Positions 37,392 to 51,577 of a stretch of 64,000 nt of DNA are shown here, piece after piece. The notes beneath the pieces are model-generated. The model did not search any database. It was not told where the DNA came from and saw only the letters and a list, made by a program, of their open reading frames with translations. How positions within the stretch are numbered: the first letter of the stretch is position 1; every line of letters begins with the position of its first letter. The translations under genes and the position numbers were made by a program. The DNA lies in sequence record PV764603.1. One strand, 5' to 3'.

Positions 37392-38125
37392 GTATCGGTA
37401 TGGGCGTCCGTGAATCGGACAGCTACAAGGGCATTATTTTCTATGGCAAGGTAGTGGACAACAATGACCCCGAACAGCTACGGCGTGTACGTGTCCATAT
37501 CCCCGAGGTCTACGGTGATACCCCTCCCGAGGAATTGCCGTGGGCCTTCCCCAAATGTCCTCCTAGCGGCACTGGCCAAAGTAGCACCTTCGGTAGCTAC
37601 GGTGTGTTGGACGTAGACAGCGAAGTATGGGTGGAGTTCCAGCAAGGCGATCCCCACTTCCCTATGGTGATTGGCGTAGCCTTGCGCGCCGACCTTCGGA
37701 AGCAGACTGAGCTAGTCAACTATCCCCACCGCTACGGCCTTGACGATTCCAAGGGTAACTGGATCATCGTTGACAAGCTGACAGGCGACGTGGAGATTGG
37801 CCACTTCTCTGATACCCGTGTTCGCATCGAGCCTAACGGCAACCTGCACATCACTTCGGTAGCCAATCAAACGATCACGGTTGAACAGAATCAAGAGACC
37901 GAAATCAAGGGCAACGCTACAGTGCAGGTGAAAGGTAACGTCAACGTCACCGTGAACGGCAATGCGGAAATGAAGGTCGATGGGGCTATGAAGGCTAACA
38001 TCGGTCAGAACCTCCAAGCTACTGTGGGTGGTAGTGCCACTGCCCAGGTTACTGGTCCTGCAACTATCAATTCAGCAGTCAAGATTTCGCTCAACGCACC
38101 AACGGTAAGTATCAACGGAGCATAA
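37388..38125 (+). CDS. central spike protein (gp5 OB-fold / gpV-like)
   Basis: GKVVDNNDPEQLRRVRVHIP, VWVEFQQGDPHFP, C-terminal beta-helix repeats (VKGNVNVTVNGN). Confidence 0.9.
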   Translation: MSIGMGVRESDSYKGIIFYGKVVDNNDPEQLRRVRVHIPEVYGDTPPEELPWAFPKCPPSGTGQSSTFGSYGVLDVDSEVWVEFQQGDPHFPMVIGVALRADLRKQTELVNYPHRYGLDDSKGNWIIVDKLTGDVEIGHFSDTRVRIEPNGNLHITSVANQTITVEQNQETEIKGNATVQVKGNVNVTVNGNAEMKVDGAMKANIGQNLQATVGGSATAQVTGPATINSAVKISLNAPTVSINGA

Positions 38126-39060: not shown

Positions 39061-40002
39061 ATGCCTGTATCTAATCCACCTACCTTGTTGAGTGTCATTG
39101 CAGAGTTCGGAGGCCCTAACAATCTTGGGGCCTATTACCGCAAAGGTCCATACGTACCTGACGGTCCTCCGCAGAATGCCAACATCAGTGATACGCCGGG
39201 CGGTCTTCGTCTCAGTCAGTTTGCGGGTGCGGTCAAGTACAATCTCAGTGCGTCCCTGAATCGCACGACCGCCAACACCAGTGGTAGTGGCAACAGCCAG
39301 TCGGGACGTGTCCTAACTCCACAGCTGATTGTTTACCCCGTTAACGGCAGCGGCAACTACAGCTACTACTGGAACTACACCGCAGGCGTCCCTGTTAGCG
39401 GAAATACCAGTAGTACGTTCCAGCTGTACGCTGATCTCAACAATGGTCAGAACATTTCTGGCAACGGTAACTGCGTGGTTACCGATAACGTCACTGGTCA
39501 GAATGCGATCCCTAGCTTTACGTTCTACCTAAGCTGGACGTATGAACGCCCACCCACCTGTGTTGTCATGGAAGCATACCTGCACGATGGAAAGCAGGCA
39601 GGCATGTACAACTCCAACGATCCTCTGCTGTTGGTCGATCCATACGCAAGGACTTCGGAGACGCTGAACATCGTAGATGCGCAGACCTTCACCCGAGAGT
39701 GTGTGACCTTGGTTACTGCCAATGGCTCACGCCTAACGTGCTCCACCACTGCACCTATTCCAGTCAAAGCCGACTCGGAAACGCTGGTTCGTGCGGTGGA
39801 TGCTCTAGGCCACCACGTTGCTACTACCACACGCCCTAACGACGTGATCCCATCGGTCACTTGGGATAAGGTAGTGCGTGTGCTGCCTGCTGGTGAGCGT
39901 GCTGTCCGCAATATCTACATCTACGACAAGTGCTTCTGGGCTTCGGATGACAATCGTTCGTTCATCCTCCATCACAACACGACTGGTAAGCAGATCATAT
40001 GA
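39061..40002 (+). CDS. short fibre-like virion protein with C-terminal Hint domain
   Basis: N-terminal module shared with 40615; Hint from CVVME (39559) to ILHHN (39978) followed by TTGKQII. Confidence 0.75.
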   Translation: MPVSNPPTLLSVIAEFGGPNNLGAYYRKGPYVPDGPPQNANISDTPGGLRLSQFAGAVKYNLSASLNRTTANTSGSGNSQSGRVLTPQLIVYPVNGSGNYSYYWNYTAGVPVSGNTSSTFQLYADLNNGQNISGNGNCVVTDNVTGQNAIPSFTFYLSWTYERPPTCVVMEAYLHDGKQAGMYNSNDPLLLVDPYARTSETLNIVDAQTFTRECVTLVTANGSRLTCSTTAPIPVKADSETLVRAVDALGHHVATTTRPNDVIPSVTWDKVVRVLPAGERAVRNIYIYDKCFWASDDNRSFILHHNTTGKQII

Positions 40003-40604
40003 TCGTCAACAAAGAACCACGCACCGCTACTCCGATGAATTGGTTGCCTACGTACTACCTCAGTCGGATGTTTAACGCAGAAGAGTGCGCCACCATCATC
40101 AAGGAGTCAGAGGACTCCGGACTGTTTGTGCAAGGCCGCACCATTGGCGACAATAACGTGACTGTAACAGAGCAAGGCCGTCAGGTGGCCATTATCCGAC
40201 TGGCTGGAGGTACGCTGTACGAAATGATGCGCCAACGGATACTGGAACGGCTGCCTGACCTAAACTCCTGCTATCAGTTTGAACTGTTCGGCGCAGATGA
40301 AGTCTTCAAGGAAATCCATATCCTGAAGTACGTGGAAGGTAATTTCCACGGTGAACATTTGGACCTCGCCGGTTACGAGGAAATGTGCAACCGGAAGCTC
40401 AGCCTCATCGTCCAGTTGAATCCGGATTACGAGGGCGGTGAATTAGTCCTCTACAACTCTTACCCCGAGAAACCTCTGACCAATAGCAAGCAGGCTGGCG
40501 ACGCAGTGGTATTCCCCGCATGGATGCCGCACGAAGTAAGACCTGTTGACTACGGGACTAGGTACGTTCTTGTGGTTTGGTTGCGAGGCCCTAAATTTAG
40601 ATAG
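39999..40604 (+). CDS. 2OG-Fe(II) oxygenase (prolyl 4-hydroxylase/PKHD-like)
   Basis: LKYVEGNFHGEHLD (HxD), RKLSLIVQLN, YEGGEL, GDAVVFPAWMPHEVRPV..GTRYVLVVW. Confidence 0.93.
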   Translation: MIVNKEPRTATPMNWLPTYYLSRMFNAEECATIIKESEDSGLFVQGRTIGDNNVTVTEQGRQVAIIRLAGGTLYEMMRQRILERLPDLNSCYQFELFGADEVFKEIHILKYVEGNFHGEHLDLAGYEEMCNRKLSLIVQLNPDYEGGELVLYNSYPEKPLTNSKQAGDAVVFPAWMPHEVRPVDYGTRYVLVVWLRGPKFR

Positions 40605-40614
40605 GGAGGTACTC

Positions 40615-41202
40615 ATGGCCGTATCAAACCCACCAACACTGGTGAGCGTGCGTAACGAATTCGGTGGCAACGGAAATCTCCGTGCCTACACACGAGGCGG
40701 TGGCCTTGTTCCAGATGGGCCTGCGCAGAATGCGAACATCAGCAAAACTCCGGACGGTTTGCGGCTTAGTCAATTTGCAGGAGCAACTAAAATCACTGCA
40801 CAGTTGACCGACATTTATGCGCAGCAGTCCTACTACGGACAATCGGGTCAAGACAACACTGCTTCTGCCACCATCCAGTTTAGTACCGATGGCAACATCT
40901 ACTACACATGGGGTATGGGAGCTTTGCAGACGTACCGATGGTTGGCTGGCGGTAATGCAAGTGATTTTGACGTAGAAGGATTTAATCAGCAGATCGCAGG
41001 TAACGGTCAAACCTCGGGCACGATGAATCGTCAGAATTTGGGTGGTTCTCCCCGATGGTCATGTTCCGCTGCAACCCGATTTGGTTTTGTTGATTCTTCC
41101 ATGTCATTTGGCTGCCGAATCTACCAAGCGGGTACTGGTAACGTTATCGCTACAGCGAATTTCAGTATTTATGCCGCCGCCTCAGATGGTAGCATCGGAT
41201 AG
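40615..41202 (+). CDS. short fibre-like virion protein, paralogue of 39061 N-terminus
   Basis: 44 of the first 59 aa identical to the 39061 protein; Gly/Asn/Ser-rich beta body. Confidence 0.75.
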   Translation: MAVSNPPTLVSVRNEFGGNGNLRAYTRGGGLVPDGPAQNANISKTPDGLRLSQFAGATKITAQLTDIYAQQSYYGQSGQDNTASATIQFSTDGNIYYTWGMGALQTYRWLAGGNASDFDVEGFNQQIAGNGQTSGTMNRQNLGGSPRWSCSAATRFGFVDSSMSFGCRIYQAGTGNVIATANFSIYAAASDGSIG

Positions 41203-41257
41203 CAACTCCATCTTCTAGTAACAACCAAAACGTTTGACACAACAAGGGAGAAGAAAC

Positions 41258-41935
41258 ATGTTCCAAGAAAGGGACCAAACTACAGCCAAATGGAATCCCC
41301 TCTGCCACGAACAGGTCAACTTGATTAACTCTTCGCTGATCGCGCGCCTCAAGGCGAAGGCAGATGAGTATCCGGTTAACCCTTACGGTTGTGGATGGGA
41401 TAGTGGCGTTCCACTGGACCTGACTGCACCGACGGCCAGTGACGCGTCGCCAGAAGCTGTGTTGATTCACGATACCCGAACGCTCATCGCAGAATGCGTC
41501 CATCGCCTATCGGGCTTCTATCCATTCGATTTGTATTTCAAGGATGCGGCCTTTGTTGTTCCTGCACCGCAACCTGCTTCGGTACGCTTGGTGCGACTCG
41601 CTATGGGTGCGAAGCTTAATCCGCCCCACGCTGGTACGGCGGTTGCTCCCGGCGCCACGAATCGCATTGATCTGAATACGCATAGTCAGGCTCATCAGAA
41701 GATTCATATGATGATCCCGCTCTCTGCTTACGAAGGTAACGACGTGTTCTTCCCCTTCTTCGATCCGAACTTGCAGGAATGGAAAGACGTGTCGCCCACC
41801 ATCACTAACGCACGGGCTGACTGGACAGGCATCACGTTGTCATGGCCTGCGTGGCGGTTGTGTAGGTTCAGTCCCGTCGAGGACGGCGAAGCCTACCTCC
41901 TGCTAGTCACGTTGTACGGACCTCGCTTCCAGTAA
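41258..41935 (+). CDS. putative Asp/Asn beta-hydroxylase-like (DSBH) protein
   Basis: VRLVRLAMGAKLNPPH...KIHMMIPL resembles the R.L.pG..I.PH...R.H.PL pattern of that family; second iron ligand unclear. Confidence 0.45.
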   Translation: MFQERDQTTAKWNPLCHEQVNLINSSLIARLKAKADEYPVNPYGCGWDSGVPLDLTAPTASDASPEAVLIHDTRTLIAECVHRLSGFYPFDLYFKDAAFVVPAPQPASVRLVRLAMGAKLNPPHAGTAVAPGATNRIDLNTHSQAHQKIHMMIPLSAYEGNDVFFPFFDPNLQEWKDVSPTITNARADWTGITLSWPAWRLCRFSPVEDGEAYLLLVTLYGPRFQ

Positions 41936-41961
41936 GTGCCCACATCTAATTCGGAACCAAC

Positions 41962-42366
41962 ATGGCAACCACCAACAACATCCTGTTTAGTGACTTCAAC
42001 ACGCTAGTCGGGTTGAATAACAAGCAAGCCATCGTCATCAATGATGATGCAGTTGCCAATGTGGTGCTCAACATTGTTCTGATCCAGAAGCGCAGCCGTA
42101 AGTTTCGGATTGGGTATGGAGCATCAAGTCACTTCTTCCTGCAAAAGCAGGTGACTGCTGAGAACGCGGAGAAGTACAGGATGACCCTCTACCAAGACCT
42201 GACCAAATGGGCCGGGTCTGTAGCCAAGTTTGATATGGCGGGCATCCAAGTGAAGCCTCTCCAGAATTACGACGGTTACGGAGTGGTCATCCTGTACAAG
42301 TCCAACCTTTCGGGTTACTACAATCAGGTTTCAGTCCAGCTGCCGTCCACCTCGGTGGCACGCTAA
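41962..42366 (+). CDS. baseplate wedge protein (gp25-like)
   Basis: AIVINDDAVANVVLNIVLIQKRSRKFRIGYGA; precedes the gp6-like gene. Confidence 0.75.
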   Translation: MATTNNILFSDFNTLVGLNNKQAIVINDDAVANVVLNIVLIQKRSRKFRIGYGASSHFFLQKQVTAENAEKYRMTLYQDLTKWAGSVAKFDMAGIQVKPLQNYDGYGVVILYKSNLSGYYNQVSVQLPSTSVAR

Positions 42367-42549
42367 TACCGAAAATAGGGCCAAAATAGGCCCACAGCAC
42401 CCTACCCACAGGGCGCCAAATTTAGAGGCTCCAGCTTCCATCTACGACCCCAATCCTTGCGTCAAAACGCATAGTTGGGGCGTAGATTTTGGCTACATTT
42501 TCCACTCCCCAACCCTCATTTTCCTATGGCCACTGACCGGAATTCAACC

Positions 42550-44307
42550 ATGACAACTGTAACCGCGTTGTCCAATATCCGCCCTGACTTCGATGACATT
42601 GCAGCACAGCTGGGATCGAGTCTGACGCGCAAGGCGAACTGGGCTCCGCTGCTTCCTACTCAGACTGCAAGCCTCTTGATTGAAGGCGTGGCCGCCGCCA
42701 CTGCGTTCCTGCAAACCGGTGTGCAGAACAGCTTTGAAGAAACGTTCCCTCAGACCGCCCGTATGCCTTCGAGCCTGCGGGCGTCTGCGCGTCGGCTCGG
42801 TGTCCGTCTGACGCGCAAGTCCCCTGCACAGACTCGGGTACGGCTCACGCGAGCCACCGCAGCCACGTCCGTCCTGATCCCTGAGTTCTCGGCCTTCCAA
42901 GCGCCGGGTGTGTCTCTGTTCAACCGCTCTGCCATACTGTTCCCCGTCGGTACCCTCTCCGCTGAATTCGACTTGTACGAAGGCTTTATCACTCAGGTTT
43001 CGTACACGGGTCAAGGTGCTGACAGTCAGATGATCGTTGTATCTGTCCCCGGCTTCACCATCAGCAACATGGACGTGCGGGTCACTGTCAGTGGCCGTCC
43101 GCTGCAAGTGGTGACTGATGGCATCTGGCACTACCCCATCACGAACAGTGGCGATCCTAACTACGTGGTATCGGACAACACGCTGCCTACGGGCGAGCTT
43201 CTGCTTGAGTTCGGTAACACTCAGTTCGGCATGATCCCTCAGCGTGGTGCGCAGATTCTTGTGTCCTATGCTGTGACCAATGGTACCTCCGGCAACAACG
43301 TACAGTTTGAGAATCAGCGCATCACGTACTCGGCCAACGGTGTTGAGTTCACTGGCAGCGCGCTTACTCCACTCACCGGAGGTACTGACGAACTTGACGC
43401 AGAGCAGTACCGCGATAGTCCGTTGATCTACGCGTCCTACGAGCGCGCGGTTGCTATTCCAGACATGCCTGCTATTGCTACGAAGTATCCCGGCGTTGTC
43501 GATGCCATCTTCCTTGGTCAGAAGGACATTGCTCCGAATCTCAAGGAATTCATGAACGTTGTCTACACCTACGTTCTGATGGATACGGGTTCTCAGATTT
43601 CTGCTACGCAGTACACGGACTTCCTCAAGTGGTGGCAGCCTCGCTCGATGCCCCTTGAGTACGTCCGCCAAACCGCCAAGCAAATTGCAGTAGACGTTGC
43701 GGGCACCATCTACATCACTGGTCAGGGCGATCCGGATTCCATCTTGGCCAAGGCGCGCGCAGCAGTTGCCAAACTGTTCACTGCACGCCAAGGTTACTTG
43801 GGTCGCGATCTGTACGTGGACGACCTTATTGACTCCATCCGTACTTCGGACCCTTACGTTGACCACGTTACCCTGACTTCACCCACCGCTGACGTTATCT
43901 GTAAGATCAACGCACCGCAGGCCCCTACTGTTACTCCGGCTACTGGCGGTACGCTCCCCAACGGTACGTACATCTATTCGGTGTCTGCTGTCTCCAATCT
44001 CAGCCCTGTGCAAGAAACGTTCGCTTCGGTGAATGGTGCGGTGACGCTGACGGGAACGAACAACGCCGCACGTATCAAGTGGAATGCAGTGGCAGGTGCT
44101 GTGCAATACAAGGTGTACGGGCGCACTGCTTCCCAAGAAATGTTCCTGCTTGCCACGGTCAGCGCATCTTCTGCGCTTGAATTCTTGGACACGGGTTCTG
44201 TTACTACTGGCGCTGCTGTCAACAAGATCAACACTGCGGGTATCTCTTACGTTACCCTCAACAATACGAACTTGCAGGTGGCGTTCACTGATCGAGTAGG
44301 TGTCTGA
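42550..44307 (+). CDS. baseplate wedge protein (gp6 / baseplate J-like) with FN3-like insertion
   Basis: PDFDDIAAQL, FEETFPQTARMPSSL, LTGGTDE, YERAVAIPD motifs. Confidence 0.88.
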   Translation: MTTVTALSNIRPDFDDIAAQLGSSLTRKANWAPLLPTQTASLLIEGVAAATAFLQTGVQNSFEETFPQTARMPSSLRASARRLGVRLTRKSPAQTRVRLTRATAATSVLIPEFSAFQAPGVSLFNRSAILFPVGTLSAEFDLYEGFITQVSYTGQGADSQMIVVSVPGFTISNMDVRVTVSGRPLQVVTDGIWHYPITNSGDPNYVVSDNTLPTGELLLEFGNTQFGMIPQRGAQILVSYAVTNGTSGNNVQFENQRITYSANGVEFTGSALTPLTGGTDELDAEQYRDSPLIYASYERAVAIPDMPAIATKYPGVVDAIFLGQKDIAPNLKEFMNVVYTYVLMDTGSQISATQYTDFLKWWQPRSMPLEYVRQTAKQIAVDVAGTIYITGQGDPDSILAKARAAVAKLFTARQGYLGRDLYVDDLIDSIRTSDPYVDHVTLTSPTADVICKINAPQAPTVTPATGGTLPNGTYIYSVSAVSNLSPVQETFASVNGAVTLTGTNNAARIKWNAVAGAVQYKVYGRTASQEMFLLATVSASSALEFLDTGSVTTGAAVNKINTAGISYVTLNNTNLQVAFTDRVGV

Positions 44308-45923
44308 TGACTATCTATAACGGCGATGATCCGAATACCTTGTTGCCTAATGCTTCATCCATCAACCCACTAATCACCTACGGCTTCCATCAAGTCTATG
44401 GCAAGATGGACGGGAATGGCGTTGTTGTGGATACGATGGGCATCATGCTGCCAGAAGGTTTCCGTGATCTTGACGTGTGGCGAGACTTCGCTGATAGCGT
44501 CGATGAGGTGATGAACAGCGAGATTGCAACGCAGATCGAAAGCCTGATGAGCACGAACGACCCGTATGCGTCTTCGGTGAATCCTGCTATTGACCGCCGT
44601 ACCCTCCTGTACCTCATTGGTGCAATCGGATTCAAGTACAAGCAAAACGACGTGTTTGACATTGATGATTTGAAGCGGTTCGTTCGTCATACTCCGCAAT
44701 TTTGGGGTGAGAAGGGCAACCGCTTCTTCATTCAGTACATGAGCTATGTCGTTAACGCCCAGCTTCAAATGCAATACCTGTGGACGCAGGACTACAAGGT
44801 GTTCGTCCCCGAGGGTAGTCCGCTGATTGGTCGCCCTGTATGGGAGTCCGCAGTAAATGCCACTGCCAACGTGGTCCCATTCGGTACAGGCGATGGTGCT
44901 CAGACTGTGTTCCCCCTGATGGTGATGAACTCCACCATCGACAGCGTTTCGGGAACCCCTACGATCTACCGCGTTGACTGGGCAGGGCAAACGCGCCTAT
45001 ACAACACGCCACGCACCAACCGCATTAGGCGTAGTGTTGAAATCGGTAGTTCTGCTTGGTACAACGATAATCCCACCAACCTGATTGTGCAGACCACTTC
45101 GGCGTCGGCACCTGACGGTAGCGCGACTGCCAGCGTGCTCAAACCTATGACTACCGGCGCTAACGCAGGCTCGCTTCTTGATGGTAGCGCAGTGACGCCC
45201 GGCCCTGTGACCTGTAGCGTTTATCAATCCTCCGAGGGATTGACCGCAGGACAGAAGGTTCGGTACGCTCTGTGGAGTGTGGACTCAAGCAACGTTATCA
45301 GTCTAGTGGGCCAAACGGATTTGGAATGGACGGGCACTCAGATGCGCGTGGCCGCATACAGTGGTCTTGCCTCCAGTGTCCTGCAATCCTTGGGTGATGG
45401 TTGGTATCGCATTGAGTACACGGGTACGACTGGCGTTGGTGCTCGACTCTCTATCCAGCCCGGCCTAACCCACACCAATCCTGTTACGGTGTGGGGCGCT
45501 CAGTTGGAGCAGGGTAGCTCTGCGACTCGCCTCATCAAGACCTACGGCGTTGAAGTAACCACCACGGATTTCGCCTTTACCAACAATAATCGGAGTATCA
45601 CCCTGTCTTCGCCGCTCCCCGTTGGCGCGAGCCTCAGCTGGAGCGGAACGTACAATCAGGCAGGCACTTGGTATCCAACAAGTCACGTATACATCGTCTA
45701 CGACGTTGATAAGTTCCGAGGCTCAGTCTCGAATAATTTCAATAGTCAAGACAGCTTGGCTGCATTTTTCTACACCATCGCTCCAATTGAACTGGTAATC
45801 CAGTCCTTCGTGCTCAACGTCAACTTTGATCCTACGGTTCTACAGTTGGCAGGTGACGTGCAGATTAGCGTATATACGCCGATGGAAGTGGAAGCTATTA
45901 CTCCGATGAACACTAGGGCTTGA
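44307..45923 (+). CDS. baseplate wedge / tail protein (gp7-like) with carbohydrate-binding-like insertion
   Basis: FWGEKGN..FIQYMSY; inserted RTNRIRRS...GDGWYRI...VWGAQLEQGS jelly-roll-type module. Confidence 0.7.
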   Translation: MTIYNGDDPNTLLPNASSINPLITYGFHQVYGKMDGNGVVVDTMGIMLPEGFRDLDVWRDFADSVDEVMNSEIATQIESLMSTNDPYASSVNPAIDRRTLLYLIGAIGFKYKQNDVFDIDDLKRFVRHTPQFWGEKGNRFFIQYMSYVVNAQLQMQYLWTQDYKVFVPEGSPLIGRPVWESAVNATANVVPFGTGDGAQTVFPLMVMNSTIDSVSGTPTIYRVDWAGQTRLYNTPRTNRIRRSVEIGSSAWYNDNPTNLIVQTTSASAPDGSATASVLKPMTTGANAGSLLDGSAVTPGPVTCSVYQSSEGLTAGQKVRYALWSVDSSNVISLVGQTDLEWTGTQMRVAAYSGLASSVLQSLGDGWYRIEYTGTTGVGARLSIQPGLTHTNPVTVWGAQLEQGSSATRLIKTYGVEVTTTDFAFTNNNRSITLSSPLPVGASLSWSGTYNQAGTWYPTSHVYIVYDVDKFRGSVSNNFNSQDSLAAFFYTIAPIELVIQSFVLNVNFDPTVLQLAGDVQISVYTPMEVEAITPMNTRA

Positions 45924-47068
45924 CCATGACCCAACTTTACATCACTGAGGCAGGCATCGCTGCTGCCAACTCGTCCAGTCCTAACGGACCTATGATCCAA
46001 ATCGTGTCGTTCGCCCTAGGCAGCGATTACGGATACACCCCTCCACCGTCCTCCGTGTACCCGGGCGCCAACAGCGTCGTTACTTCGCAGAGTGCGCTAC
46101 GCGGCACGGTACGCTATCCAGTTGGTACTCAGCGTGCCGTACCCAGTAACTACCACCTCGCCGCTGATGGTATCACAGGCGTGTTCACGCTAGTGGTAGG
46201 TCTGGACGTGGGCGACTTCTCGTTTGGTGAAGTCGCACTCTACATGCCCGGCAACGTCATGTTCGGTATTGCAGTTCTTCCTCAACTGCAAACCAAACTG
46301 ACTACCACACAGAGTCAGACGGGCAACATCATCAACATGACGGTCAGCTTCCAGCTGAACGGTGTCAAGCCCAACATCACTGTGCAGAATGTCACGACCG
46401 CACTGGCTGATATTCGCACGGTCGGTACCGTTGACGTGATGAGTCCCCCTTCGGCCAGCCCTACCAACAACGCCATTTCTTTGCAGGTTGATGAATACAA
46501 CCGCAGCAACTTGATGACGAAGCGTGACACCGACCTGTGGCAGTCCCAGCAGTATGACTGGATTGTACATGAAGGTGTTGTGCAGGTATCGGGCGACAAG
46601 ACTCTGAGTGATGCGACTCTGGCTACGTCGCCTATCTACGTTGCACCGGGCCGCTACATTCTGCAATTCACCAGTGGTGCGTTGAAAGGTCAGGTTCGCC
46701 AAATCACAGCCTTCCCTGTGTGGGCTGCAAGTGTGGTTCGTCGCGTGGGTGACGTTATTCAGCCTACCAACAATCCCAACGTCCTACTTAGGTGTACTAC
46801 CGCTGGCACTTCGGGTACTGCACAGCCAACGTGGAACACTGGCACTTCGGGTGCCACCACTACGGATGGCACGGCGGTGTGGACGTATACGCCCAACAGG
46901 GATTCTCCGAATACCACGCTTTCGTGGGCGGGCTCTACCTCTTCCAATGCGCTGAACGGCGTTACCTACGCTGTGTACCGTGCCGCATCTTTCAGTGGCA
47001 TTCGTCAGTACATCGGCGAATACATGCTAGACGCAATGCCCATCAACTATTACAACCAACACCACTGA
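45920..47068 (+). CDS. tail-collar fibre protein (DUF3751-like) with CBM5/12-like module
   Basis: LYITEAGIAAA, GDFSFGEVALY; WAASVVRRVGD...RCTTAGTSG..QPTW...DGTAVW. Confidence 0.8.
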   Translation: MTMTQLYITEAGIAAANSSSPNGPMIQIVSFALGSDYGYTPPPSSVYPGANSVVTSQSALRGTVRYPVGTQRAVPSNYHLAADGITGVFTLVVGLDVGDFSFGEVALYMPGNVMFGIAVLPQLQTKLTTTQSQTGNIINMTVSFQLNGVKPNITVQNVTTALADIRTVGTVDVMSPPSASPTNNAISLQVDEYNRSNLMTKRDTDLWQSQQYDWIVHEGVVQVSGDKTLSDATLATSPIYVAPGRYILQFTSGALKGQVRQITAFPVWAASVVRRVGDVIQPTNNPNVLLRCTTAGTSGTAQPTWNTGTSGATTTDGTAVWTYTPNRDSPNTTLSWAGSTSSNALNGVTYAVYRAASFSGIRQYIGEYMLDAMPINYYNQHH

Positions 47069-47080
47069 GGATTTCCCAAC

Positions 47081-47428
47081 ATGGCTTTCACTCCTTCCTC
47101 CGGCGTCCTCGGTCAGATCAGGCCCTCAGGCGCAACTGAGACTGTTCTCTACACTTGCCCTGCTGATGCACGTGCCTCTGTCAGCATTACCTGCTGCAAC
47201 ACGGATAGCGGCTCTACCACTGTAACGGTCAAGGTGAGGTCAGGTTCCACGTCCACTGCTCTTGTGAGCGGTGCTCAGTTGGCACCCGCAGGTGAACAGG
47301 GACACTCAATCGACATTCGTGCTCTGATTCTTGGGCCGGGCCAGTCGGTAGCAGTCACTAGCTTCAGTGGTACTGTAGATTTCAGCGCAATCGGGTACAC
47401 GGCGCCTTCCAACGTCGTTGCGTTCTAA
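47081..47428 (+). CDS. small virion structural protein
   Basis: ETVLYTCP...SITCCN beta-sandwich pattern among fibre genes. Confidence 0.65.
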   Translation: MAFTPSSGVLGQIRPSGATETVLYTCPADARASVSITCCNTDSGSTTVTVKVRSGSTSTALVSGAQLAPAGEQGHSIDIRALILGPGQSVAVTSFSGTVDFSAIGYTAPSNVVAF

Positions 47429-47438
47429 GAGGTGACCG

Positions 47439-49724
47439 ATGATTACCCATCAGGATACACTGTTCTCCAACATCCTATACGGAAATAATTGGAGTGCAGC
47501 TACCTACCAAGCCGCAAATCGGTTCACCATCCAAGGTGACAAGCGAACTTCGTATGAGGTAGGTACCCAGGTTCAGATTCTCACGTCCGCCGTAGCTACC
47601 ATGCAGTACAGCTACGTCAGTGCAGTCACATTCGCATCCAACGTCACTACGGTGACAGTCAGCGACGGCCTGTTCGCCTCGGGTCAGAAGATCAATGTTC
47701 GTGCGTCGCCGTTTGGCGCCAACAACATGCCCCTCGGCCGACGCTTCAAAGAAATCAGCGTGTTCGGTGCGAACGGTCTAACGATCTCGAATGCGAGTCC
47801 GAAGTTCACCTTGTTCGTGGAGGGCGTTGGCGCAGGCAAAGTCAACACGTTCACTTTCCAGCCGGGCTCTGACGGTATCTCGTTCAAGGTGGGACGTGAT
47901 GCGATTGGTCTCGATGCCATGCGCATCGACGCCACTTCGACTGCCATCACCAAGGTGACGTTGTTCTCGCCCCTGACCTTTGGCGCGACGTATACGGGCG
48001 CCCTGACTTCGCTGACCGACCTTCTGACGATTGGTCAATACGCACTGACCTATTCGGCTACGGGTTCTTCGACCGGCAGCAATCGTCTGTATATCTCCGG
48101 CCCTAATGGCGGCGAGTTCACCGTTGGTCCTACCAACGATGCTCAGGTATTCCGTCGTATTCGACTGCGTGCTACTGACGTTGTGGTCGAGAACAATCCC
48201 GGCGGTTCCTCGCAAGCAGGCTCGATCTGGCATAGCCTCAACTTCGATCCTGACACCCGTGTTACCAAGGGTCAGAATGGTTCTTGGATGGATTCGGCTT
48301 ACACTGCGATCAACAACCTTAACAACGCTCAGGGGTATTTCAACCAGTGGGCATCGGGCGCCGCACAGGCTCCTGTTGCAGGTTCGACGGGTGTTGTGCA
48401 AACCATGCACAGTGCGGGTGGCAACAACTTTAACCCTGTGGCTGGTGCTTCGCTGGTGCAGACGGCTTATGTCACCAATGGCACCGCACCTGCCCTGTAT
48501 GTGCGACGCAACGTAGGTGCTTCGGGTTGGTCTGCATGGACTAAGCTGTATACCCAAGCAGATTTCTCGCTTGGCGATTACGTCAAGATCGCAGGCGGTG
48601 ATACCATCCAGTCCCCGATCACTGTACGTACTGCCTTGTCCGTTGGCACGACTGCGGATGCAACGTCCACCCTGAACTTCGGTACCTCGGCCAGTCCCAA
48701 CGGTCCTGCTGCTACCATTTCTGTTACGGGCGGCGCAGCGACCACGGGTCGTGGTGCAATGACTATCAACGCGCAGTCCATCGCGCTGCCTGCACTGAAC
48801 GTCAACGGTACGATGAACGTTTCGGGCGCTGCTTCGATGGCGGGCCCACTGACCATCACTACTGGCTCCATACTGCTGGGTAACGGCACGTATGGGGAAT
48901 CGCGTATTAGCAATACCTTCGACGACTGGTATTTGTATTCCAGTCCTACGGGACTTGGCTGGTACAGTATCAGTAAGGGTAGTGCTTTCTCACTGGACAA
49001 GAACAGCAAGGCGTTCACGTTCAATGGTGCGGGTACCATCAACGGTCAGACTACCATCAATGGTGGTCTGAACGTGGCGAGCGGTAGCGGCATCATCACT
49101 TCGGGTAACGTTGTTGGCGCTAACGGCAACTTCTCCAATGACGTGTTTGCCCCGGGTGCTTTCCGTGGCGCTCGCCTGCACATCTATGCAAACTGTATTG
49201 CCTATGGCCAGGGTTTCCTCCCTAGTTGGAACGACTACGGTGATGGCGCAACGGTCCTGACTAACGCACGCGGCGGTGGTACGGGCGGCTTCAAGTTCCG
49301 TCAGATGAACAGTGATGGCGGTGGTCAGGTCTTCCTTGCCTTCATCAACCCGAACGGTACCATCGGTTCGGCGTCGGACGAACGCATGAAGGAATTCGGT
49401 AAGGTACTCGACCTGTCTGACGCTCTTCGGTTCATCCGTGAGCAGCGAGTCAAGCACGTCAAGTGGAAGCACACCGGCGAGGAGGATATTGCGTTTGGTG
49501 CGCAGAGCATCTTCAAGACCACTAGATTCCTAGCCCACTACGACAAGGGTGCTGACTTCTGGCAGCTGTACTACCCGAAGGTAGCTCTGTACCATCACGA
49601 AGCTCTCTTCCATATCCTTGAAGTGCAGAACAATCACGAAGCCGACATTCAGATTCTGATTCGCAAGAACGAAAATCTGGAAGAGGAAGTGAAGCAGCTG
49701 CGCGAACGGTTGGATTCTCTCTAA
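47439..49724 (+). CDS. long tail fibre with knob domain and C-terminal intramolecular chaperone (peptidase S74)
   Basis: SASDERMKE cleavage motif, IAFGAQ, terminal coiled coil LEEEVKQLRERL; knob-like LYVRRN..GWSAW. Confidence 0.9.
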   Translation: MITHQDTLFSNILYGNNWSAATYQAANRFTIQGDKRTSYEVGTQVQILTSAVATMQYSYVSAVTFASNVTTVTVSDGLFASGQKINVRASPFGANNMPLGRRFKEISVFGANGLTISNASPKFTLFVEGVGAGKVNTFTFQPGSDGISFKVGRDAIGLDAMRIDATSTAITKVTLFSPLTFGATYTGALTSLTDLLTIGQYALTYSATGSSTGSNRLYISGPNGGEFTVGPTNDAQVFRRIRLRATDVVVENNPGGSSQAGSIWHSLNFDPDTRVTKGQNGSWMDSAYTAINNLNNAQGYFNQWASGAAQAPVAGSTGVVQTMHSAGGNNFNPVAGASLVQTAYVTNGTAPALYVRRNVGASGWSAWTKLYTQADFSLGDYVKIAGGDTIQSPITVRTALSVGTTADATSTLNFGTSASPNGPAATISVTGGAATTGRGAMTINAQSIALPALNVNGTMNVSGAASMAGPLTITTGSILLGNGTYGESRISNTFDDWYLYSSPTGLGWYSISKGSAFSLDKNSKAFTFNGAGTINGQTTINGGLNVASGSGIITSGNVVGANGNFSNDVFAPGAFRGARLHIYANCIAYGQGFLPSWNDYGDGATVLTNARGGGTGGFKFRQMNSDGGGQVFLAFINPNGTIGSASDERMKEFGKVLDLSDALRFIREQRVKHVKWKHTGEEDIAFGAQSIFKTTRFLAHYDKGADFWQLYYPKVALYHHEALFHILEVQNNHEADIQILIRKNENLEEEVKQLRERLDSL

Positions 49725-49766
49725 GGACATTGGGCACAGGGACGTGCTCCTTTTTAGGTAGAGGCT

Positions 49767-51158
49767 ATGTGGATCACCCCTCAGAATCAAACTCTTGATG
49801 ACACGTTCGATCCATACTTTCCGGGTACAACTCGGTGGTATGGTTACACCGGCATCCTCATCAACAACACGCAAGACACCTACGATCGGTACGCTCCTTT
49901 GCAGTATGGCAGGCAAGCTCCATCCACGGCGATCCTTGCGCAGAATCAGGTAGACCTGAATCAGATTTACGCAGCCCGAGGTACAGCAGGCTACCTGCAA
50001 GGTATCTCTATCCCAAATTGCTACGTGGGCTGCTCTGGCGTTACCATCAACGATCTTCTCGCTGCTCGATGCACCATCATCATCAAGAACGACGGTACGT
50101 GGCAGCAGTGGTTCTATTCCACCAACTACAAGACGGATAGCCCGGGTGCATATGCACCTCCTAATCGTGGCATCCCTCGAACCGAAACCAACTTCAGCAA
50201 CGGACGCATGAACGCCGCCGGTAACTGGGCACAGATTCCGTTCGCTGGTGTGGGTAACAACTACGAGACTTTCTGCCACGCTCCTTGGGCCCCATACGAA
50301 AGCAAGAACCCACCTGATCTAGATTGGGGTACTGCCGATCACTATAATCGGTATGATGCTGCACTCATCAACTATATCTGGCACAACTTTAAGGGCCAAG
50401 GACAGTTCGGTAGTGCTAGTGATCCATACGTGGTGCAGAACACTACACAGAACCCCAACGAAGACATTCCTGACGGTCGGGTATACCGCATCGACCGCGA
50501 CATTCGGTTCACCCTTGGCTTGACTGCACAGGGACGCAACAACGTTCGTTGGAACTACGACGACAACGGCGCTCTGTCATGGTACAACCGAGCCAACTTT
50601 TCGGTGTACATTCAGACACCCGGTGGTGGTCAGCGTGTAGGTGCCACGTGCTTGATGGCCAATGAGATTCGATGGAACGCATGGAATTGGACGGGTGGTA
50701 GCGTCGGCGGCGGTGGTGGCGGTGGTGGCGGTGGTTGCGTTGCTGCTACCAGCTATGTTGACTTCCAAAAGACCGCAGGCACTGTTGAGGCAGGCGACTA
50801 CCTCATGGGTATGACGGATGATCTGCAATTTATGGAGCTACACGTCCTGAGTGTGCGTCGTCAAGTGCAACCGTGTGTCCGACTCTACTCAAAGAGTGGC
50901 GTCACCCTTGTGTGCTCAAAGTCCACGCCGCTGACCCTACAGAACGGAGATTGCGTGCTGGCAGGCGAAGCACGAGCAGGTATCAAGCTTCCGGTACGAT
51001 TCTTCGCGGCTGATCCTGAGTGGGAAACCATCGTCAAGATCGAGGAGGTTGGCAACCGGGAAGTGATGCTCATCAACTGCGGTGGACAGAGCTATGCTGC
51101 CGGTGAGTTGCCGGGCCGCTATATCTACACCCACAACAACAACCAGCAGAAGATGTGA
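49767..51158 (+). CDS. fibre-tip/adhesin-like protein with Gly10 linker and C-terminal Hint domain
   Basis: Trp/Tyr/Asn-rich body; G10 then CVAATS (50736) ... YIYTHN (51137). Confidence 0.8.
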   Translation: MWITPQNQTLDDTFDPYFPGTTRWYGYTGILINNTQDTYDRYAPLQYGRQAPSTAILAQNQVDLNQIYAARGTAGYLQGISIPNCYVGCSGVTINDLLAARCTIIIKNDGTWQQWFYSTNYKTDSPGAYAPPNRGIPRTETNFSNGRMNAAGNWAQIPFAGVGNNYETFCHAPWAPYESKNPPDLDWGTADHYNRYDAALINYIWHNFKGQGQFGSASDPYVVQNTTQNPNEDIPDGRVYRIDRDIRFTLGLTAQGRNNVRWNYDDNGALSWYNRANFSVYIQTPGGGQRVGATCLMANEIRWNAWNWTGGSVGGGGGGGGGGCVAATSYVDFQKTAGTVEAGDYLMGMTDDLQFMELHVLSVRRQVQPCVRLYSKSGVTLVCSKSTPLTLQNGDCVLAGEARAGIKLPVRFFAADPEWETIVKIEEVGNREVMLINCGGQSYAAGELPGRYIYTHNNNQQKM

Positions 51159-51577
51159 TGATTGGTTCTGACCAACTCTCAGAAGTAGGTGTACCTGTCG
51201 GAGAGCTCTCCATTGGGAGGACTCTCGACGTATATGCGGTGGACGATCTACACTCGGTCATCCGCCTGAAAGGAACCGTCTCAAATCGGGTCCTGCGCAG
51301 TGCAGAAGTAGTAACCATCACAACTGCCTCCGGCGCTTCCGTTGTGGTGGCTGCCCAAAGTCGCCTCCCTGTCTATAGCGGACAGACAGCGCTGGCTAAG
51401 AATGTTGGTGCCAACATGATTGCTGTGATGGCCCCTAATGGCGCTTTTCGGTGGGAGCGGGTTGCCACCATCGAGGCTGGTACTGAGGCCGTAGTGGACC
51501 TCAAGTGTGAAGGCTACATAGTAGCCGGTAACGATCCTAAAACCGGGCTAATCTTGGTGTCTGGATCGCTGCCGTGA
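51155..51577 (+). CDS. stand-alone degenerate Hint-like protein
   Basis: Hint-like blocks (VGELSIG, VVTITTASGASVVVAAQSRLP, WERVATIE, VVDLKCE.YIVAG) but no N-terminal Cys/Ser and no terminal HN. Confidence 0.55.
   Translation: MMIGSDQLSEVGVPVGELSIGRTLDVYAVDDLHSVIRLKGTVSNRVLRSAEVVTITTASGASVVVAAQSRLPVYSGQTALAKNVGANMIAVMAPNGAFRWERVATIEAGTEAVVDLKCEGYIVAGNDPKTGLILVSGSLP

What the first reader, a model, noticed from the sequence alone, without database searches (positions are those of the whole stretch)
39061..51577. Candidate Hint-based processing system for tail fibre tips: two apparently active Hint fusions and one apparently inactive stand-alone Hint
Seen: 39061..40002 and 49767..51158 both end in a roughly 135-140 aa domain that starts with Cys (PT-CVVME; G10-CVAAT) and ends in His-Asn. 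Both replace the usual block-B TxxH with CSxx[A/T]P (CSTTAP, CSKSTP). A translationally coupled third gene (51155..51577) has Hint-like spacing but lacks both catalytic ends. Known: Hint domains autoprocess through a Cys1 thioester and Asn cyclisation, and Hedgehog uses the thioester to attach cholesterol. Inference: the phage may cleave, splice or chemically cap the C-termini of receptor-binding proteins, with the inactive paralogue as partner, chaperone or regulator. The neighbouring fibre also carries an S74 auto-cleaving chaperone, so autoprocessing domains cluster in this region.
Basis: partly seen in the sequence, partly recalled or inferred. Interest (0 to 1): 0.82.

Follow-up and report, generated by a model that had tools for sequence, protein, structure and literature searches.

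The report
Self-processing Hint modules on phage fibres
Two baseplate/fibre-cluster proteins of a Xanthomonas jumbo phage end in an uncurated intein-like (Hint) domain that keeps the self-cleaving residues and is always followed by a short lysine-bearing tail, and a third gene is a catalytically dead copy, which points to a widespread but unstudied way of cutting or covalently capping the ends of phage fibres.

Summary
The window is Xanthomonas jumbo phage PhiXhv-16. g1 (39061-40002) and g2 (49767-51158) end in homologous 140- and 134-residue domains, running Cys167-Asn306 and Cys324-Asn457. The AlphaFold model of g2's domain matches inteins, the Hedgehog autoprocessing domain and bacterial intein-like (BIL) domains (TM 0.75-0.81). 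g3 (51158-51577) is a confident Hint fold that lacks the nucleophile, the block-B Ser/Pro and the His-Asn. A g3 orthologue follows the g2 orthologue, with overlapping stop and start, in 5 of 5 related loci.

Pfam and NCBIfam do not recognise the family, yet a profile finds 1,192 protein clusters. In the 178 best domains:
- Position 1 is Cys (148) or Ser (26).
- His-Asn is near-invariant.
- The block-B His is replaced by Thr or Ala.
- A Gly run usually precedes the domain.
- The +1 residue is not a conserved nucleophile.
- Every short C-terminal tail (128 of 128) carries a Lys.

My best reading is a BIL-like, self-removing C-terminal module. The thioester may be resolved by the tail Lys, as in Tetrahymena BIL2, but no chemistry has been tested. 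That the proteins are fibre tips or receptor binders rests on gene context only. This is a new variant of a known kind, of moderately high interest.

The parts
39061..40002 (+). g1, a 313-aa baseplate-cluster protein: N-terminal adaptor (aa 1-60), middle part, Hint domain, Lys tail
   Evidence: ORF and translation. It lies two genes after the gp5-like spike. GenBank annotates it as a hypothetical protein.
39559..39978 (+). g1 Hint domain, Cys167-Asn306, of the 'His-His-Asn / block-B Ala' subtype (Ser228, Ala231, Pro232, Asp296)
   Evidence: hhalign against the g2 family: probability 99.4%, E 8e-22. Invariant columns in A2. Subtype covariation.
39979..39999 (+). g1 7-residue C-terminal tail with Thr307 at +1 and Lys310
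   Evidence: The +1 Thr is not conserved in relatives (T, T, A, K, A, M); the Lys is.
39999..40604 (+). 2OG-Fe(II) oxygenase (prolyl-hydroxylase-like) whose start overlaps the g1 stop by 4 nt; a possible functional partner of g1
   Evidence: Pfam PF13640 E 2.4e-15. It holds the same position, with overlap, after g1-type genes in L009 and L010, and lies within 2 kb in L008.
40615..41202 (+). 195-aa Hint-less paralogue of g1 sharing the N-terminal ~60-residue adaptor
   Evidence: BLASTP E 4e-26, with the first 60 residues about 75% identical.
47439..49724 (+). 761-aa fibre protein upstream of g2, with an S74-like intramolecular-chaperone C-terminus (from about aa 646, nt 49374)
   Evidence: PF13884 E 0.043, sub-threshold. 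It is 41% identical to the L003 orthologue, whose piece scores E 2.9e-8.
49767..51158 (+). g2, a 463-aa protein at the end of the fibre module: N-terminal part (aa 1-313), Gly10 linker, Hint domain, Lys tail
   Evidence: Synteny of collar fibre, 115 aa, long S74 fibre, Hint protein, g3, 225 aa, lysozyme is conserved in L002, L003, L018 and L019.
50706..50735 (+). Run of 10 Gly codons (GGC/GGT) immediately before Cys324
   Evidence: A Gly run (at least 4 of the 8 upstream residues) occurs in 128 of 174 family domains, and Gly at -1 in 111 of 174.
50736..51137 (+). g2 Hint domain, Cys324-Asn457, of the 'Thr-His-Asn / block-B Thr' subtype (Ser384, Thr387, Pro388, Glu447)
   Evidence: AF2 pLDDT 75-95. 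Foldseek against PDB: NpuDnaB intein E 2e-8, TM 0.79; Hedgehog 1at0, TM 0.78; Cth BIL 2lwy; BIL2 6y75. Profile against the gp41-1 intein, E 8e-4.
51138..51155 (+). g2 6-residue tail, with Asn at +1 and penultimate Lys462
   Evidence: Lys is present in all 128 short tails of the family and is penultimate for 90 of 132 Lys.
51158..51577 (+). g3, a 139-aa stand-alone, catalytically degenerate Hint domain, translationally coupled to g2
   Evidence: AF2 pLDDT 92. Foldseek: Hedgehog 1at0 E 1.8e-6, TMq 0.72, plus inteins and BILs. Orthologues in 5 of 5 loci.
37388..38125 (+). gp5-like central spike, which places g1 in the baseplate module
   Evidence: Pfam Phage_base_V E 9.6e-12, Gp5_trimer_C, Gp5_C.

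Best explanation
g1 and g2 carry a previously uncurated subfamily of the Hint (Hedgehog/intein) superfamily, closest in logic to bacterial intein-like (BIL) domains. It acts as a self-processing module at the C-terminus of phage baseplate and fibre proteins.

Proposed mechanism:
1. Inferred: Cys1 (Cys167 in g1, Cys324 in g2) attacks the preceding peptide bond (Thr166|Cys167; Gly323|Cys324 after a flexible Gly10 linker), giving a thioester.
2. Inferred: the terminal Asn (306; 457), helped by the preceding His, cyclises and cuts the domain from its 6-7-residue tail.
3. Inferred, less certain: the thioester is resolved by an amine, most plausibly the invariant Lys of the tail. This would leave the N-terminal part ending in Gly joined by an isopeptide bond to the small tail peptide. 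Alternatively, water resolves it and the result is plain cleavage.

The net effect is that the Hint domain is excised from the protein that stays on the virion.

g3 is a catalytically dead paralogue that keeps only the fold. It is made together with g2 and probably binds g2's Hint or its product as a non-enzymatic partner. Its role is the least certain part.

Shown here: the fold, the homology, residue conservation, architecture and synteny. Not shown: any chemistry.

The confidence of 0.55 is for 'autoprocessing Hint module that removes itself'. The Lys-isopeptide sub-step alone would rate about 0.25-0.3.
For: Fold:
- The g2 domain model (pLDDT 75-95) gives 50 of 50 top PDB hits to inteins, Hedgehog Hog and BIL domains (E 2e-8, TM 0.75-0.81).
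- g3 gives the same hits.
- A weak but specific sequence link to inteins places block B.

Functional constraint. In 178 domains from 171 representatives sharing at most 50% identity:
- Position 1 is Cys in 148, Ser in 26 and a gap in 4. This nucleophile exchange is what inteins show.
- Block-B Ser 176 of 178; Pro 176 of 178.
- Terminal His 174 and Asn 170.
- A block-F acidic residue in 135.
- Two covarying subtypes: block-B Thr with Thr-His-Asn (109 domains), and block-B Ala with His-His-Asn (57 domains). This argues that the active site was rewired, not lost.

Architecture:
- The module sits at the extreme C-terminus of proteins of 150-2,800 aa with unrelated N-terminal parts: PKD, collagen, Gp53-like fibre, Mtd_N, Phage-tail_3, Big_9, pilin.
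- It is usually preceded by a Gly run, in 128 of 174 domains.

Tail:
- It is 4-12 residues in 128 domains, and all 128 contain Lys.
- Lys lies within +1 to +6 in 155 of 170 domains, against 17% of control 6-mers. The other 15 have it at +7 to +13.
- Longer tails nearly all have Lys at +2.
- +1 is mostly Leu, Ala, Met, Val, Ile or Pro, and never Cys.

Precedent: Tetrahymena BIL2 splices a Gly-terminated ubiquitin-like domain onto a Lys epsilon-amine (PMC8616854). BIL2 is among the fold hits.

g3: orthologues with the same stop/start overlap occur in 5 of 5 loci at 32-41% identity, and all lack the catalytic positions. Fused analogues exist, in which an active Hint is followed by a degenerate second Hint (P0025, P0032).
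Against: - The block-B His, the most conserved catalytic residue of inteins, Hedgehog and BIL2, is absent in 177 of 178 domains. The N-S acyl shift may therefore be slow, may need a compensating residue, or may not occur.
- No Pfam or NCBIfam Hint model matches g1, g2 or g3 even at E 1. Only 2 of 100 relatives touch Intein_splicing or PT-HINT.
- No proteomic or biochemical data exist for these genes in the PhiXhv, XacN1 or LucasX papers.
- The tail is modelled with pLDDT below 50, so no geometry supports Lys attack.
- The position of the Lys varies from +1 to +13. That fits a tethered nucleophile, but it also fits a non-chemical role such as charge or recognition.
- Joining a pentapeptide to a fibre has no obvious use.
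- In P0041 and P0059 the part in front of the Hint is only a ~60-residue adaptor, so 'mature fibre plus discarded Hint' cannot be the whole story.
- The g3 model was built on an alignment made mostly of active family members.
Confidence: 0.55

Rival explanations
1. Plain Hedgehog-like N-terminal autocleavage. The Hint makes the thioester, water hydrolyses it, and the N-terminal part is released with a free poly-Gly end. The His-Asn and the tail Lys serve only folding or catalysis, for instance the Lys standing in for the missing block-B His.
For: Gly at -1 and Cys1 as in Hedgehog. The Hedgehog domain is among the best fold hits. Tandem second domains in pilin-like relatives end in His-His without Asn and could only cleave N-terminally. 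A Lys compensating for a missing block-B His has been reported for an archaeal CDC21 intein (my own knowledge, not checked here).
Against: Asn is kept in 170 of 178 domains, although it is unnecessary for N-cleavage. The Lys position relative to Asn is too variable (+1 to +13) for a precisely placed catalytic residue.
Confidence: 0.25
2. Ordinary selfish mini-inteins that splice the N-terminal part to a short C-extein.
For: Cys1, the terminal His-Asn and the mini-intein size are present. g1 has Thr307 at +1. The best fold hits are mini-inteins.
Against: +1 is a nucleophile in only 18 of 171 domains and is never Cys. In g1's own relatives +1 is T, T, A, K, A, M. There is no homing endonuclease. 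The module is always terminal, sits in unrelated host proteins, follows a Gly linker, and has a 4-12-residue 'extein'. It is not inserted in a conserved site of an essential enzyme. The block-B His is absent.
Confidence: 0.05
3. A non-catalytic structural Hint. The domain stays on the virion as the distal knob of the protein, perhaps as a binding domain, and the conserved ends are structural.
For: g3 proves that a non-catalytic Hint can be maintained for a long time. In P0041 and P0059 the Hint is most of the protein. The block-B His is missing.
Against: Cys/Ser alternation at position 1, the near-invariant His-Asn at the exact intein positions, and the covariation of active-site residues are hard to explain structurally. 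g3 shows what happens when catalysis is not selected: all these residues are lost.
Confidence: 0.1
4. Thioester transfer to another molecule. The Gly-terminated N-terminal part is covalently ligated to a Lys or N-terminus of another virion protein, as a molecular staple, or to an amine on the host surface at adsorption. The tail Lys acts as the default or competing acceptor.
For: The BIL2 precedent of a 'dispensing platform' that conjugates to several substrates. The minimal adaptor + Gly run + Hint architecture. Location among baseplate and fibre proteins.
Against: There is no direct evidence, and no conserved acceptor has been identified. g3 has no invariant Lys.
Confidence: 0.1

Closest known systems
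A-type bacterial intein-like (BIL) domains (Amitai et al. 2003; Dassa et al. 2004; structure 2LWY of the Clostridium thermocellum BIL)
   Same: Hint fold. Cys1 and a C-terminal His-Asn. A C-flank without a nucleophile. Found in variable, non-conserved surface or secreted proteins rather than in conserved enzymes. No homing endonuclease (PMC7765530; fold hit 2lwy).
   Different: The block-B His is replaced by Thr or Ala. It has an invariant Lys-bearing short tail and a strictly C-terminal position after a Gly run. Pfam PT-HINT and Intein_splicing models do not match. It occurs in phage baseplate and fibre proteins.
BIL2 of the Tetrahymena thermophila BUBL polyubiquitin-like locus (PDB 6Y75/6TMM)
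   Same: A Hint domain placed after a Gly-terminated domain. Its thioester is resolved by a Lys epsilon-amine in the C-flank, giving an isopeptide bond without ATP (PMC8616854). It is also a fold hit. Tandem arrangements exist in both.
   Different: BIL2 keeps the block-B His (H69) and is zinc-activated. Its C-flank is a whole ubiquitin-like domain, not a 4-12-residue tail. It is eukaryotic. For the phage family the Lys attack is inference only.
Hedgehog C-terminal autoprocessing (Hog/Hint) domain (PDB 1AT0)
   Same: A C-terminal Hint that cleaves at Gly|Cys and uses the thioester to modify the new C-terminus. It is the top fold hit for g3 and among the top hits for g2.
   Different: Hedgehog has the block-B Thr-x-x-His, a sterol-recognition region and no terminal Asn. 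The phage family has His-Asn plus a Lys tail and no sterol-recognition region.
Pre-toxin HINT (PT-HINT) of polymorphic toxins
   Same: An autoproteolytic Hint on filamentous or fibre-like stalks, including phage-tail-fibre-like repeats (PMC3482391).
   Different: PT-HINT sits upstream of a C-terminal toxin domain, which it releases. Here nothing but a few residues follows the domain. One MAG protein, P0101, has RHS repeats after it.
Peptidase S74 intramolecular chaperone of phage fibres and endosialidases
   Same: A self-cleaving C-terminal module of phage fibre proteins. It is found on the neighbouring fibres in the same gene clusters.
   Different: Unrelated fold and chemistry: a Ser-Lys dyad protease that trimerises, against the Hint thioester/Asn cyclisation.

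Membership tests
Hint (Hedgehog/intein) superfamily | Hint beta-fold | tested here: met
   g2 domain: Foldseek E 2e-8, TM 0.75-0.81 to inteins, Hog and BIL. g3: pLDDT 92, TMq 0.72. g1: by homology to g2, hhalign 99.4%.
Hint (Hedgehog/intein) superfamily | Cys/Ser/Thr nucleophile at position 1 | tested here: met
   Cys167 (g1) and Cys324 (g2). In the family, Cys 148 and Ser 26 of 178. Not met by g3, which has Met1 on that column.
Hint (Hedgehog/intein) superfamily | Block B Thr-x-x-His | tested here: not met
   The Thr-equivalent is kept as Ser (176 of 178). The His position is Thr in 116, Ala in 60 and His in 1.
Canonical class-1 inteins | Cys/Ser/Thr at +1 of a functional C-extein | tested here: not met
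   g2 has Asn at +1. g1 has Thr at +1, but it is not conserved. In the family, Ser/Thr at +1 in 18 of 171 and no Cys. The tails are 4-12 residues.
Canonical class-1 inteins | Terminal His-Asn (block G) | tested here: met
   His 174 and Asn 170 of 178. Absent in g3.
Canonical class-1 inteins | Insertion in a conserved site of a conserved host protein; inteinless alleles exist | tested here: not met
   The module is always C-terminal on unrelated N-terminal parts. No Hint-less allele with the same tail was found. The g1 paralogue at 40615-41202 ends differently.
A-type BIL / PT-HINT (Pfam PF07591) and Intein_splicing (PF14890) | Match to the curated family model | tested here: not met
   No Pfam hit for g1, g2 or g3 at E up to 1. 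One of 100 relatives hits each model. No NCBIfam hit.
A-type BIL | Cys1 + His-Asn with a non-nucleophilic C-flank, in variable non-conserved proteins | tested here: met
   Definition taken from PMC7765530.
BIL2-type isopeptide-forming Hint | Lys in the C-flank acts as the nucleophile on the thioester | not testable with these tools
   A Lys is present in every tail. Its chemical role needs mass spectrometry or a structure.
Hedgehog Hog domain | Sterol-recognition region after the Hint; no terminal Asn | tested here: not met
   Only 6-7 residues follow the domain, and the terminal Asn is present.
Peptidase S74 (neighbouring fibre 47439-49724) | Match to PF13884 with the Ser-Asp-x-Arg-x-Lys start | tested here: inconclusive
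   E 0.043, 14.6 bits against a cut-off of 22. The 41%-identical orthologue scores E 2.9e-8.

The most novel reading that the evidence does not exclude
The family is an ATP-independent, ubiquitin-like conjugation device of phage virions. The Hint turns the Gly-run C-terminus of a baseplate or fibre adaptor into a thioester, which is captured by a Lys amine. The acceptor would be the invariant tail Lys by default (an isopeptide 'self-cap'), and possibly Lys residues of other virion proteins or amines on the host surface, giving covalent stapling or covalent adsorption. g3-type dead Hints would act as partners that hold or time the reaction. With at least 1,192 clusters, this would be a widespread and unrecognised protein-ligation chemistry in phages and some bacterial surface proteins.
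Probability: 0.25. Interest if true: 0.85.

Novelty: new variant of a known kind. Interest (0 to 1): 0.66.

Why it matters
Self-processing of phage fibres is so far known mainly through S74 chaperones. A second, chemically different self-processing module would add a new step to virion assembly. It is Hint-based, present in more than a thousand protein clusters and invisible to Pfam and NCBIfam. It would also explain a set of 'hypothetical proteins' in jumbo-phage baseplate and fibre clusters.

For intein enzymology, the family is a natural experiment. It keeps Cys/Ser1 and His-Asn but lacks the block-B His, and it carries a universal Lys in a short flexible tail. If the Lys resolves the thioester, the Tetrahymena BIL2 isopeptide chemistry would extend from one eukaryotic curiosity to a large prokaryotic and viral family. 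That would make the question of how Hint domains choose their nucleophile directly testable.

The conserved dead paralogue g3, and its fused counterparts, form a rare case of a maintained pseudo-enzyme partner for a Hint domain.

Tried and rejected
- Pfam and NCBIfam scans of g1, g2 and g3 found no Hint family, even at E 1. PHROGs gave only weak 'tail protein' hits and one unknown-function family for the g2 N-terminus.
- PDB sequence searches: single-sequence g2 gave a gp41-1 intein hit only at E 0.07, among poly-Gly noise. g1 gave nothing. The whole-protein profile A1 gave only poly-Gly artefacts. The domain-only profile A4 was needed to reach E 8e-4.
- The word-indexed homologue search for g3 found only itself, and the viral-contig scan with the g3 alignment found nothing. 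g3 orthologues were found instead by walking the contigs that encode g2 orthologues.
- Pattern-based scans of genome and viral collections with A4 were too narrow: 4 loci, all in Microbulbifer variabilis, and 1 viral locus.
g3 was therefore modelled with an alignment of active family members.
- The papers on PhiXhv phages, XacN1, LucasX, jumbo phages in general and polymorphic toxins contain nothing on these genes or on a Hint in fibres.
- Rejected: ordinary intein (no +1 nucleophile, terminal position, no endonuclease).
- Rejected: PT-HINT (no toxin after the domain).
- Rejected: a general link between the family and the 2OG oxygenase. It is seen only next to g1-type genes of related jumbo phages and not in other loci.
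- HMM profiles were built in scripts for searching only.

Full report
**Source and setting.** The region is 100% identical to Xanthomonas phage PhiXhv-16 (PV764603.1, 229 kb). This is a virulent jumbo myovirus of X. hortorum pv. vitians. Near-identical copies occur in PhiXhv-12 and -15 and in phages Ep026 and Ep032. GenBank calls all three genes 'hypothetical protein', and the paper describing the phages does not mention inteins or Hint domains.

- g1 (39061-40002) lies in the baseplate module. The order is gp5-like spike (37388-38125; Pfam Phage_base_V, Gp5_C), a Pro-rich 310-aa protein, g1, then a 2OG-Fe(II) oxygenase whose start overlaps the g1 stop.
- g2 (49767-51158) and g3 (51158-51577) close the fibre module. 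The order is a collar-fibre-like protein (Phage_tail_fib), a 115-aa protein, a 761-aa fibre, g2, g3, a 225-aa protein, then two glycoside hydrolases.

- g1 has Cys167 after Pro-Pro-Thr and ends His-His-Asn306 plus 7 residues.
- g2 has ten Gly (314-323), then Cys324, and ends His-Asn457 plus 6 residues.
- The two C-terminal domains align end to end, with Cys on Cys and His-Asn on His-Asn: BLASTP E 2e-8; hhalign of the two families, probability 99.4%, E 8e-22.
- g3 is a weaker but real homologue. A profile of g3 orthologues hits many wider family members, down to E 1e-14 in the local set.
- In the multiple alignment, g3's initiator Met falls on the Cys1 column and its end falls on the His-Asn column. 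g3 is a free-standing copy of just the domain.
- There are exactly three copies in the window.

**Is it a Hint fold?**

- Curated sequence models say nothing: Pfam and NCBIfam give no hit at E up to 1.
- An AlphaFold model of g2, built on 21 homologues, is confident for residues 322-457 (pLDDT 75-95) and poor for the N-terminal part.
- Foldseek against the PDB returns only Hint folds in the top 50: NpuDnaB intein (E 2e-8, TM 0.79), gp41-1 intein, Hedgehog 1AT0 (TM 0.78), the Clostridium thermocellum BIL domain 2LWY and Tetrahymena BIL2.
- The g3 model has pLDDT 92 and matches Hedgehog 1AT0 (E 1.8e-6, TMq 0.72) and the same inteins.
- A domain-only profile reaches the gp41-1 intein at E 8e-4 and PhoCDC21-1 at E 0.0036. 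Their block-B Ser/Thr-x-x-His aligns on Ser-Lys-Ser-Thr of g2.
The Thr-equivalent is Ser, and the His is replaced by Thr387 in g2 and Ala231 in g1.

**The family.**

- A word-indexed search found 20 relatives of the g2 domain (44-58% identity) with at least three unrelated N-terminal architectures. It found 5 relatives of g1.
- An exhaustive profile search of 1.84 billion representative proteins found 1,192 clusters at E up to 1e-3, of which 916 were at E up to 1e-10.
- The domain is almost always at the very C-terminus of proteins of 150-2,800 aa.
- Of 100 members scanned, one hits Pfam Intein_splicing and one hits PT-HINT. The N-terminal parts, where recognisable, are PKD, collagen, Gp53-like fibre, Big_9/cadherin, fn3 and CBM.
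- Among the long members, the N-terminal parts are Mtd_N + fn3 + Big_9, Phage-tail_3 + Rcc01698_C, and type-IV-pilin-like N-termini. One partial RHS protein from a Burkholderiales MAG also carries the domain.
- Among sequenced phages, tblastn finds the domain in only nine records: the PhiXhv/Ep group, XacN1 ORF231, RTH11, LucasX and Stenotrophomonas phage DLP6 'VlrC'.
- In BFVD the best matches are these homologues, followed by unnamed 'Hint domain containing' proteins of uncultured phages.

**Column statistics.** These come from 178 domains in the 171 proteins in hand.

| Feature | Count |
|---|---|
| Position 1 | Cys 148, Ser 26, gap 4 |
| Residue -1 | Gly, 111 of 174 |
| Gly run upstream (at least 4 of 8) | 128 of 174 |
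| Block-B Ser | 176 of 178 |
| Block-B 'His' position | Thr 116, Ala 60, His 1 |
| Following Pro | 176 of 178 |
| Acidic residue in block F | 135 of 178 |
| Terminal His / Asn | 174 / 170 |
| +1 residue | Leu, Ala, Met, Val, Ile or Pro mostly; Ser/Thr 18; Cys 0 |

- Two subtypes covary. One has block-B Thr with Thr-His-Asn (109 domains, including all the Ser-nucleophile forms and g2). The other has block-B Ala with His-His-Asn (57 domains, including g1).
- The tail after Asn is 4-12 residues in 128 domains. All 128 contain a Lys, which is penultimate for 90 of 132 Lys.
- Nearly all the tails longer than 12 residues listed have Lys at +2.
- Lys lies within +1 to +6 in 155 of 170 domains, against 17% of control 6-mers inside the domain. 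The other 15 have it at +7 to +13.
It is the most striking feature of the family.
- These counts describe the best-scoring 150 representatives plus the earlier hits, not all 1,192 clusters.

**What it most likely does.**

- Near-invariance of exactly the positions that do intein chemistry, the Cys/Ser exchange at position 1, and the covarying active-site residues all argue that the domain is an enzyme acting on its own two junctions. g3 has lost all of these residues, which shows what happens when catalysis is not selected.
- The architecture is a flexible Gly linker, a terminal position, unrelated cargo and no endonuclease. It matches BIL domains and Hedgehog, not selfish inteins.
- I therefore read g1 and g2 as carrying a BIL-like, self-removing C-terminal module. 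The steps would be an N-S acyl shift at Thr166|Cys167 and Gly323|Cys324, Asn cyclisation at Asn306 and Asn457, and resolution of the thioester.
- For the last step, the universal Lys on a short tail that AlphaFold models as disordered (pLDDT below 50) is best explained as a tethered amine nucleophile.
- There is an exact precedent. BIL2 of the Tetrahymena BUBL locus splices a Gly-terminated ubiquitin-like domain onto a Lys epsilon-amine, forming an isopeptide bond without ATP (PMC8616854, section 2.4).
- A-type BILs are also reported to process both ends without a +1 nucleophile (PMC7765530). That they can ligate through the freed alpha-amine is my recollection of Dassa et al. 2004 and Aranko et al. 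2013, which I did not check here.
- All chemistry is inference. The missing block-B His is the main argument that the reaction might be slow, conditional or absent.

**The fibre-tip idea.** It rests on context only.

- g1 shares its first ~60 residues (about 75% identity) with a Hint-less 195-aa paralogue at 40615-41202.
- The same adaptor motif heads small relatives such as P0041 (210 aa; BLASTP E 9e-9).
- P0059 (211 aa) has the same layout and is a complete gene between two S74-bearing fibres of a 375-kb phage contig. Its N-terminal motif likeness rests on the alignment.
- In these small proteins, only the adaptor and a Gly run precede the Hint. What is left after processing would be a small anchor ending in Gly. 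This fits a ligation or stapling function at least as well as 'unmasking a receptor-binding tip'.

**g3.**

- A 139-141-aa orthologue follows the g2 orthologue, with overlapping stop and start, in all five loci of the 450-aa class: the window, L002, L003, L018 and L019. Identity is 32-41%, with a conserved Trp-Glu-Arg core.
- It does not follow the 280-aa class (L004, XacN1) or the tandem pair in L006.
- Fused analogues exist. P0025 and P0032 have an active His-His-Asn Hint followed by a truncated, end-less second Hint.
- These are 'Rosetta-stone' hints that an active and a dead Hint work together. How they do so cannot be told from sequence.

**S74 neighbour.**

- The 761-aa fibre upstream of g2 has a C-terminus starting Ser-Asp-Glu-Arg-Met-Lys. 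It scores PF13884 at only E 0.043, below the cut-off.
- It is 41% identical to the L003 orthologue, which passes at E 2.9e-8.
- S74-bearing fibres flank Hint genes in L003, L006, L008, L019 and L020.

**Verdict.**

- The element is a new, large and uncurated subfamily of a known superfamily. Its signature is distinctive: no block-B His, a Gly-run leader, a Lys tail and dead paralogues.
- No rule of the brief was breached. Profiles were used for searching only.

Noticed in passing
window 39999-40604; L009 6500-7108; L010 5945-6559; L008 8425-9036 (-): A 2OG-Fe(II) oxygenase (PF13640, prolyl-hydroxylase-like) starts 4 nt before the g1 stop. The same coupled position follows g1-type Hint genes in two diverged relatives, one with a collagen-like N-terminus, and an oxygenase lies within 2 kb in a third. 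It is not seen near g2-type or bacterial members. It may hydroxylate a residue of g1 or of a baseplate protein, or it may only reflect shared synteny.
   Followed up: partly
window 40615-41202: A 195-aa protein shares the first ~60 residues (about 75% identity) with g1 but has no Hint and ends in Ser-Ile-Gly. This N-terminal motif also heads small metagenomic Hint proteins (P0041, P0059). It looks like a common baseplate/fibre attachment adaptor.
   Followed up: partly
P0034, P0039, P0086 (metagenomic proteins; no locus fetched): Proteins with type-IV-pilin-like N-termini (N_methyl, PilS) in P0034 and P0039 carry two Hint domains in tandem. The first is complete (Cys ... His-His-Asn, then Lys-Lys). 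The second has Cys1 but ends in His-His at the protein's end, with no Asn. P0086 has the same tandem arrangement. This suggests two different reactions on one five-residue linker.
   Followed up: no
P0025 (L009 5001-6503) and P0032: A g1-type Hint (with a collagen-like N-terminal part in P0025) is followed, after Lys-Lys-Val-Gly, by a second, truncated Hint without the terminal His-Asn. This is a fused counterpart of the g2+g3 gene pair.
   Followed up: partly
window 38127-39059: The 310-aa protein between the gp5-like spike and g1 is hydrophobic and ends in a long Ile-Pro/Leu-Pro repeat. It has no Pfam or PHROG match. It may be a spike-tip or membrane-interacting protein.
   Followed up: no
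window 50706-50735: The Gly10 linker is encoded by a 30-nt GGC/GGT repeat. The same Gly-run junction separates unrelated N-terminal parts from the Hint module in relatives, so it may be a recombination joint for module exchange.
   Followed up: no
L011-L014 (Microbulbifer variabilis ATCC 700307 contigs): Four copies of the domain occur in one bacterial genome. Two are at the end of ORFs of about 1,480 aa, so the family is not confined to phages, or the genome holds prophage-like or tailocin-like elements.
   Followed up: no
L002 9881-10720: In the closest metagenomic relative, a 279-aa gene with a weak ADP-ribosyltransferase-type Pfam hit (PF03496) is inserted after the lysozyme genes downstream of g2/g3. 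The window has no counterpart at that position.
   Followed up: no
L006 4927-6894: One relative carries two g2-type Hint proteins (322 and 331 aa) in tandem, after an S74 gene and a 130-aa gene, and has no g3-like gene.
   Followed up: partly
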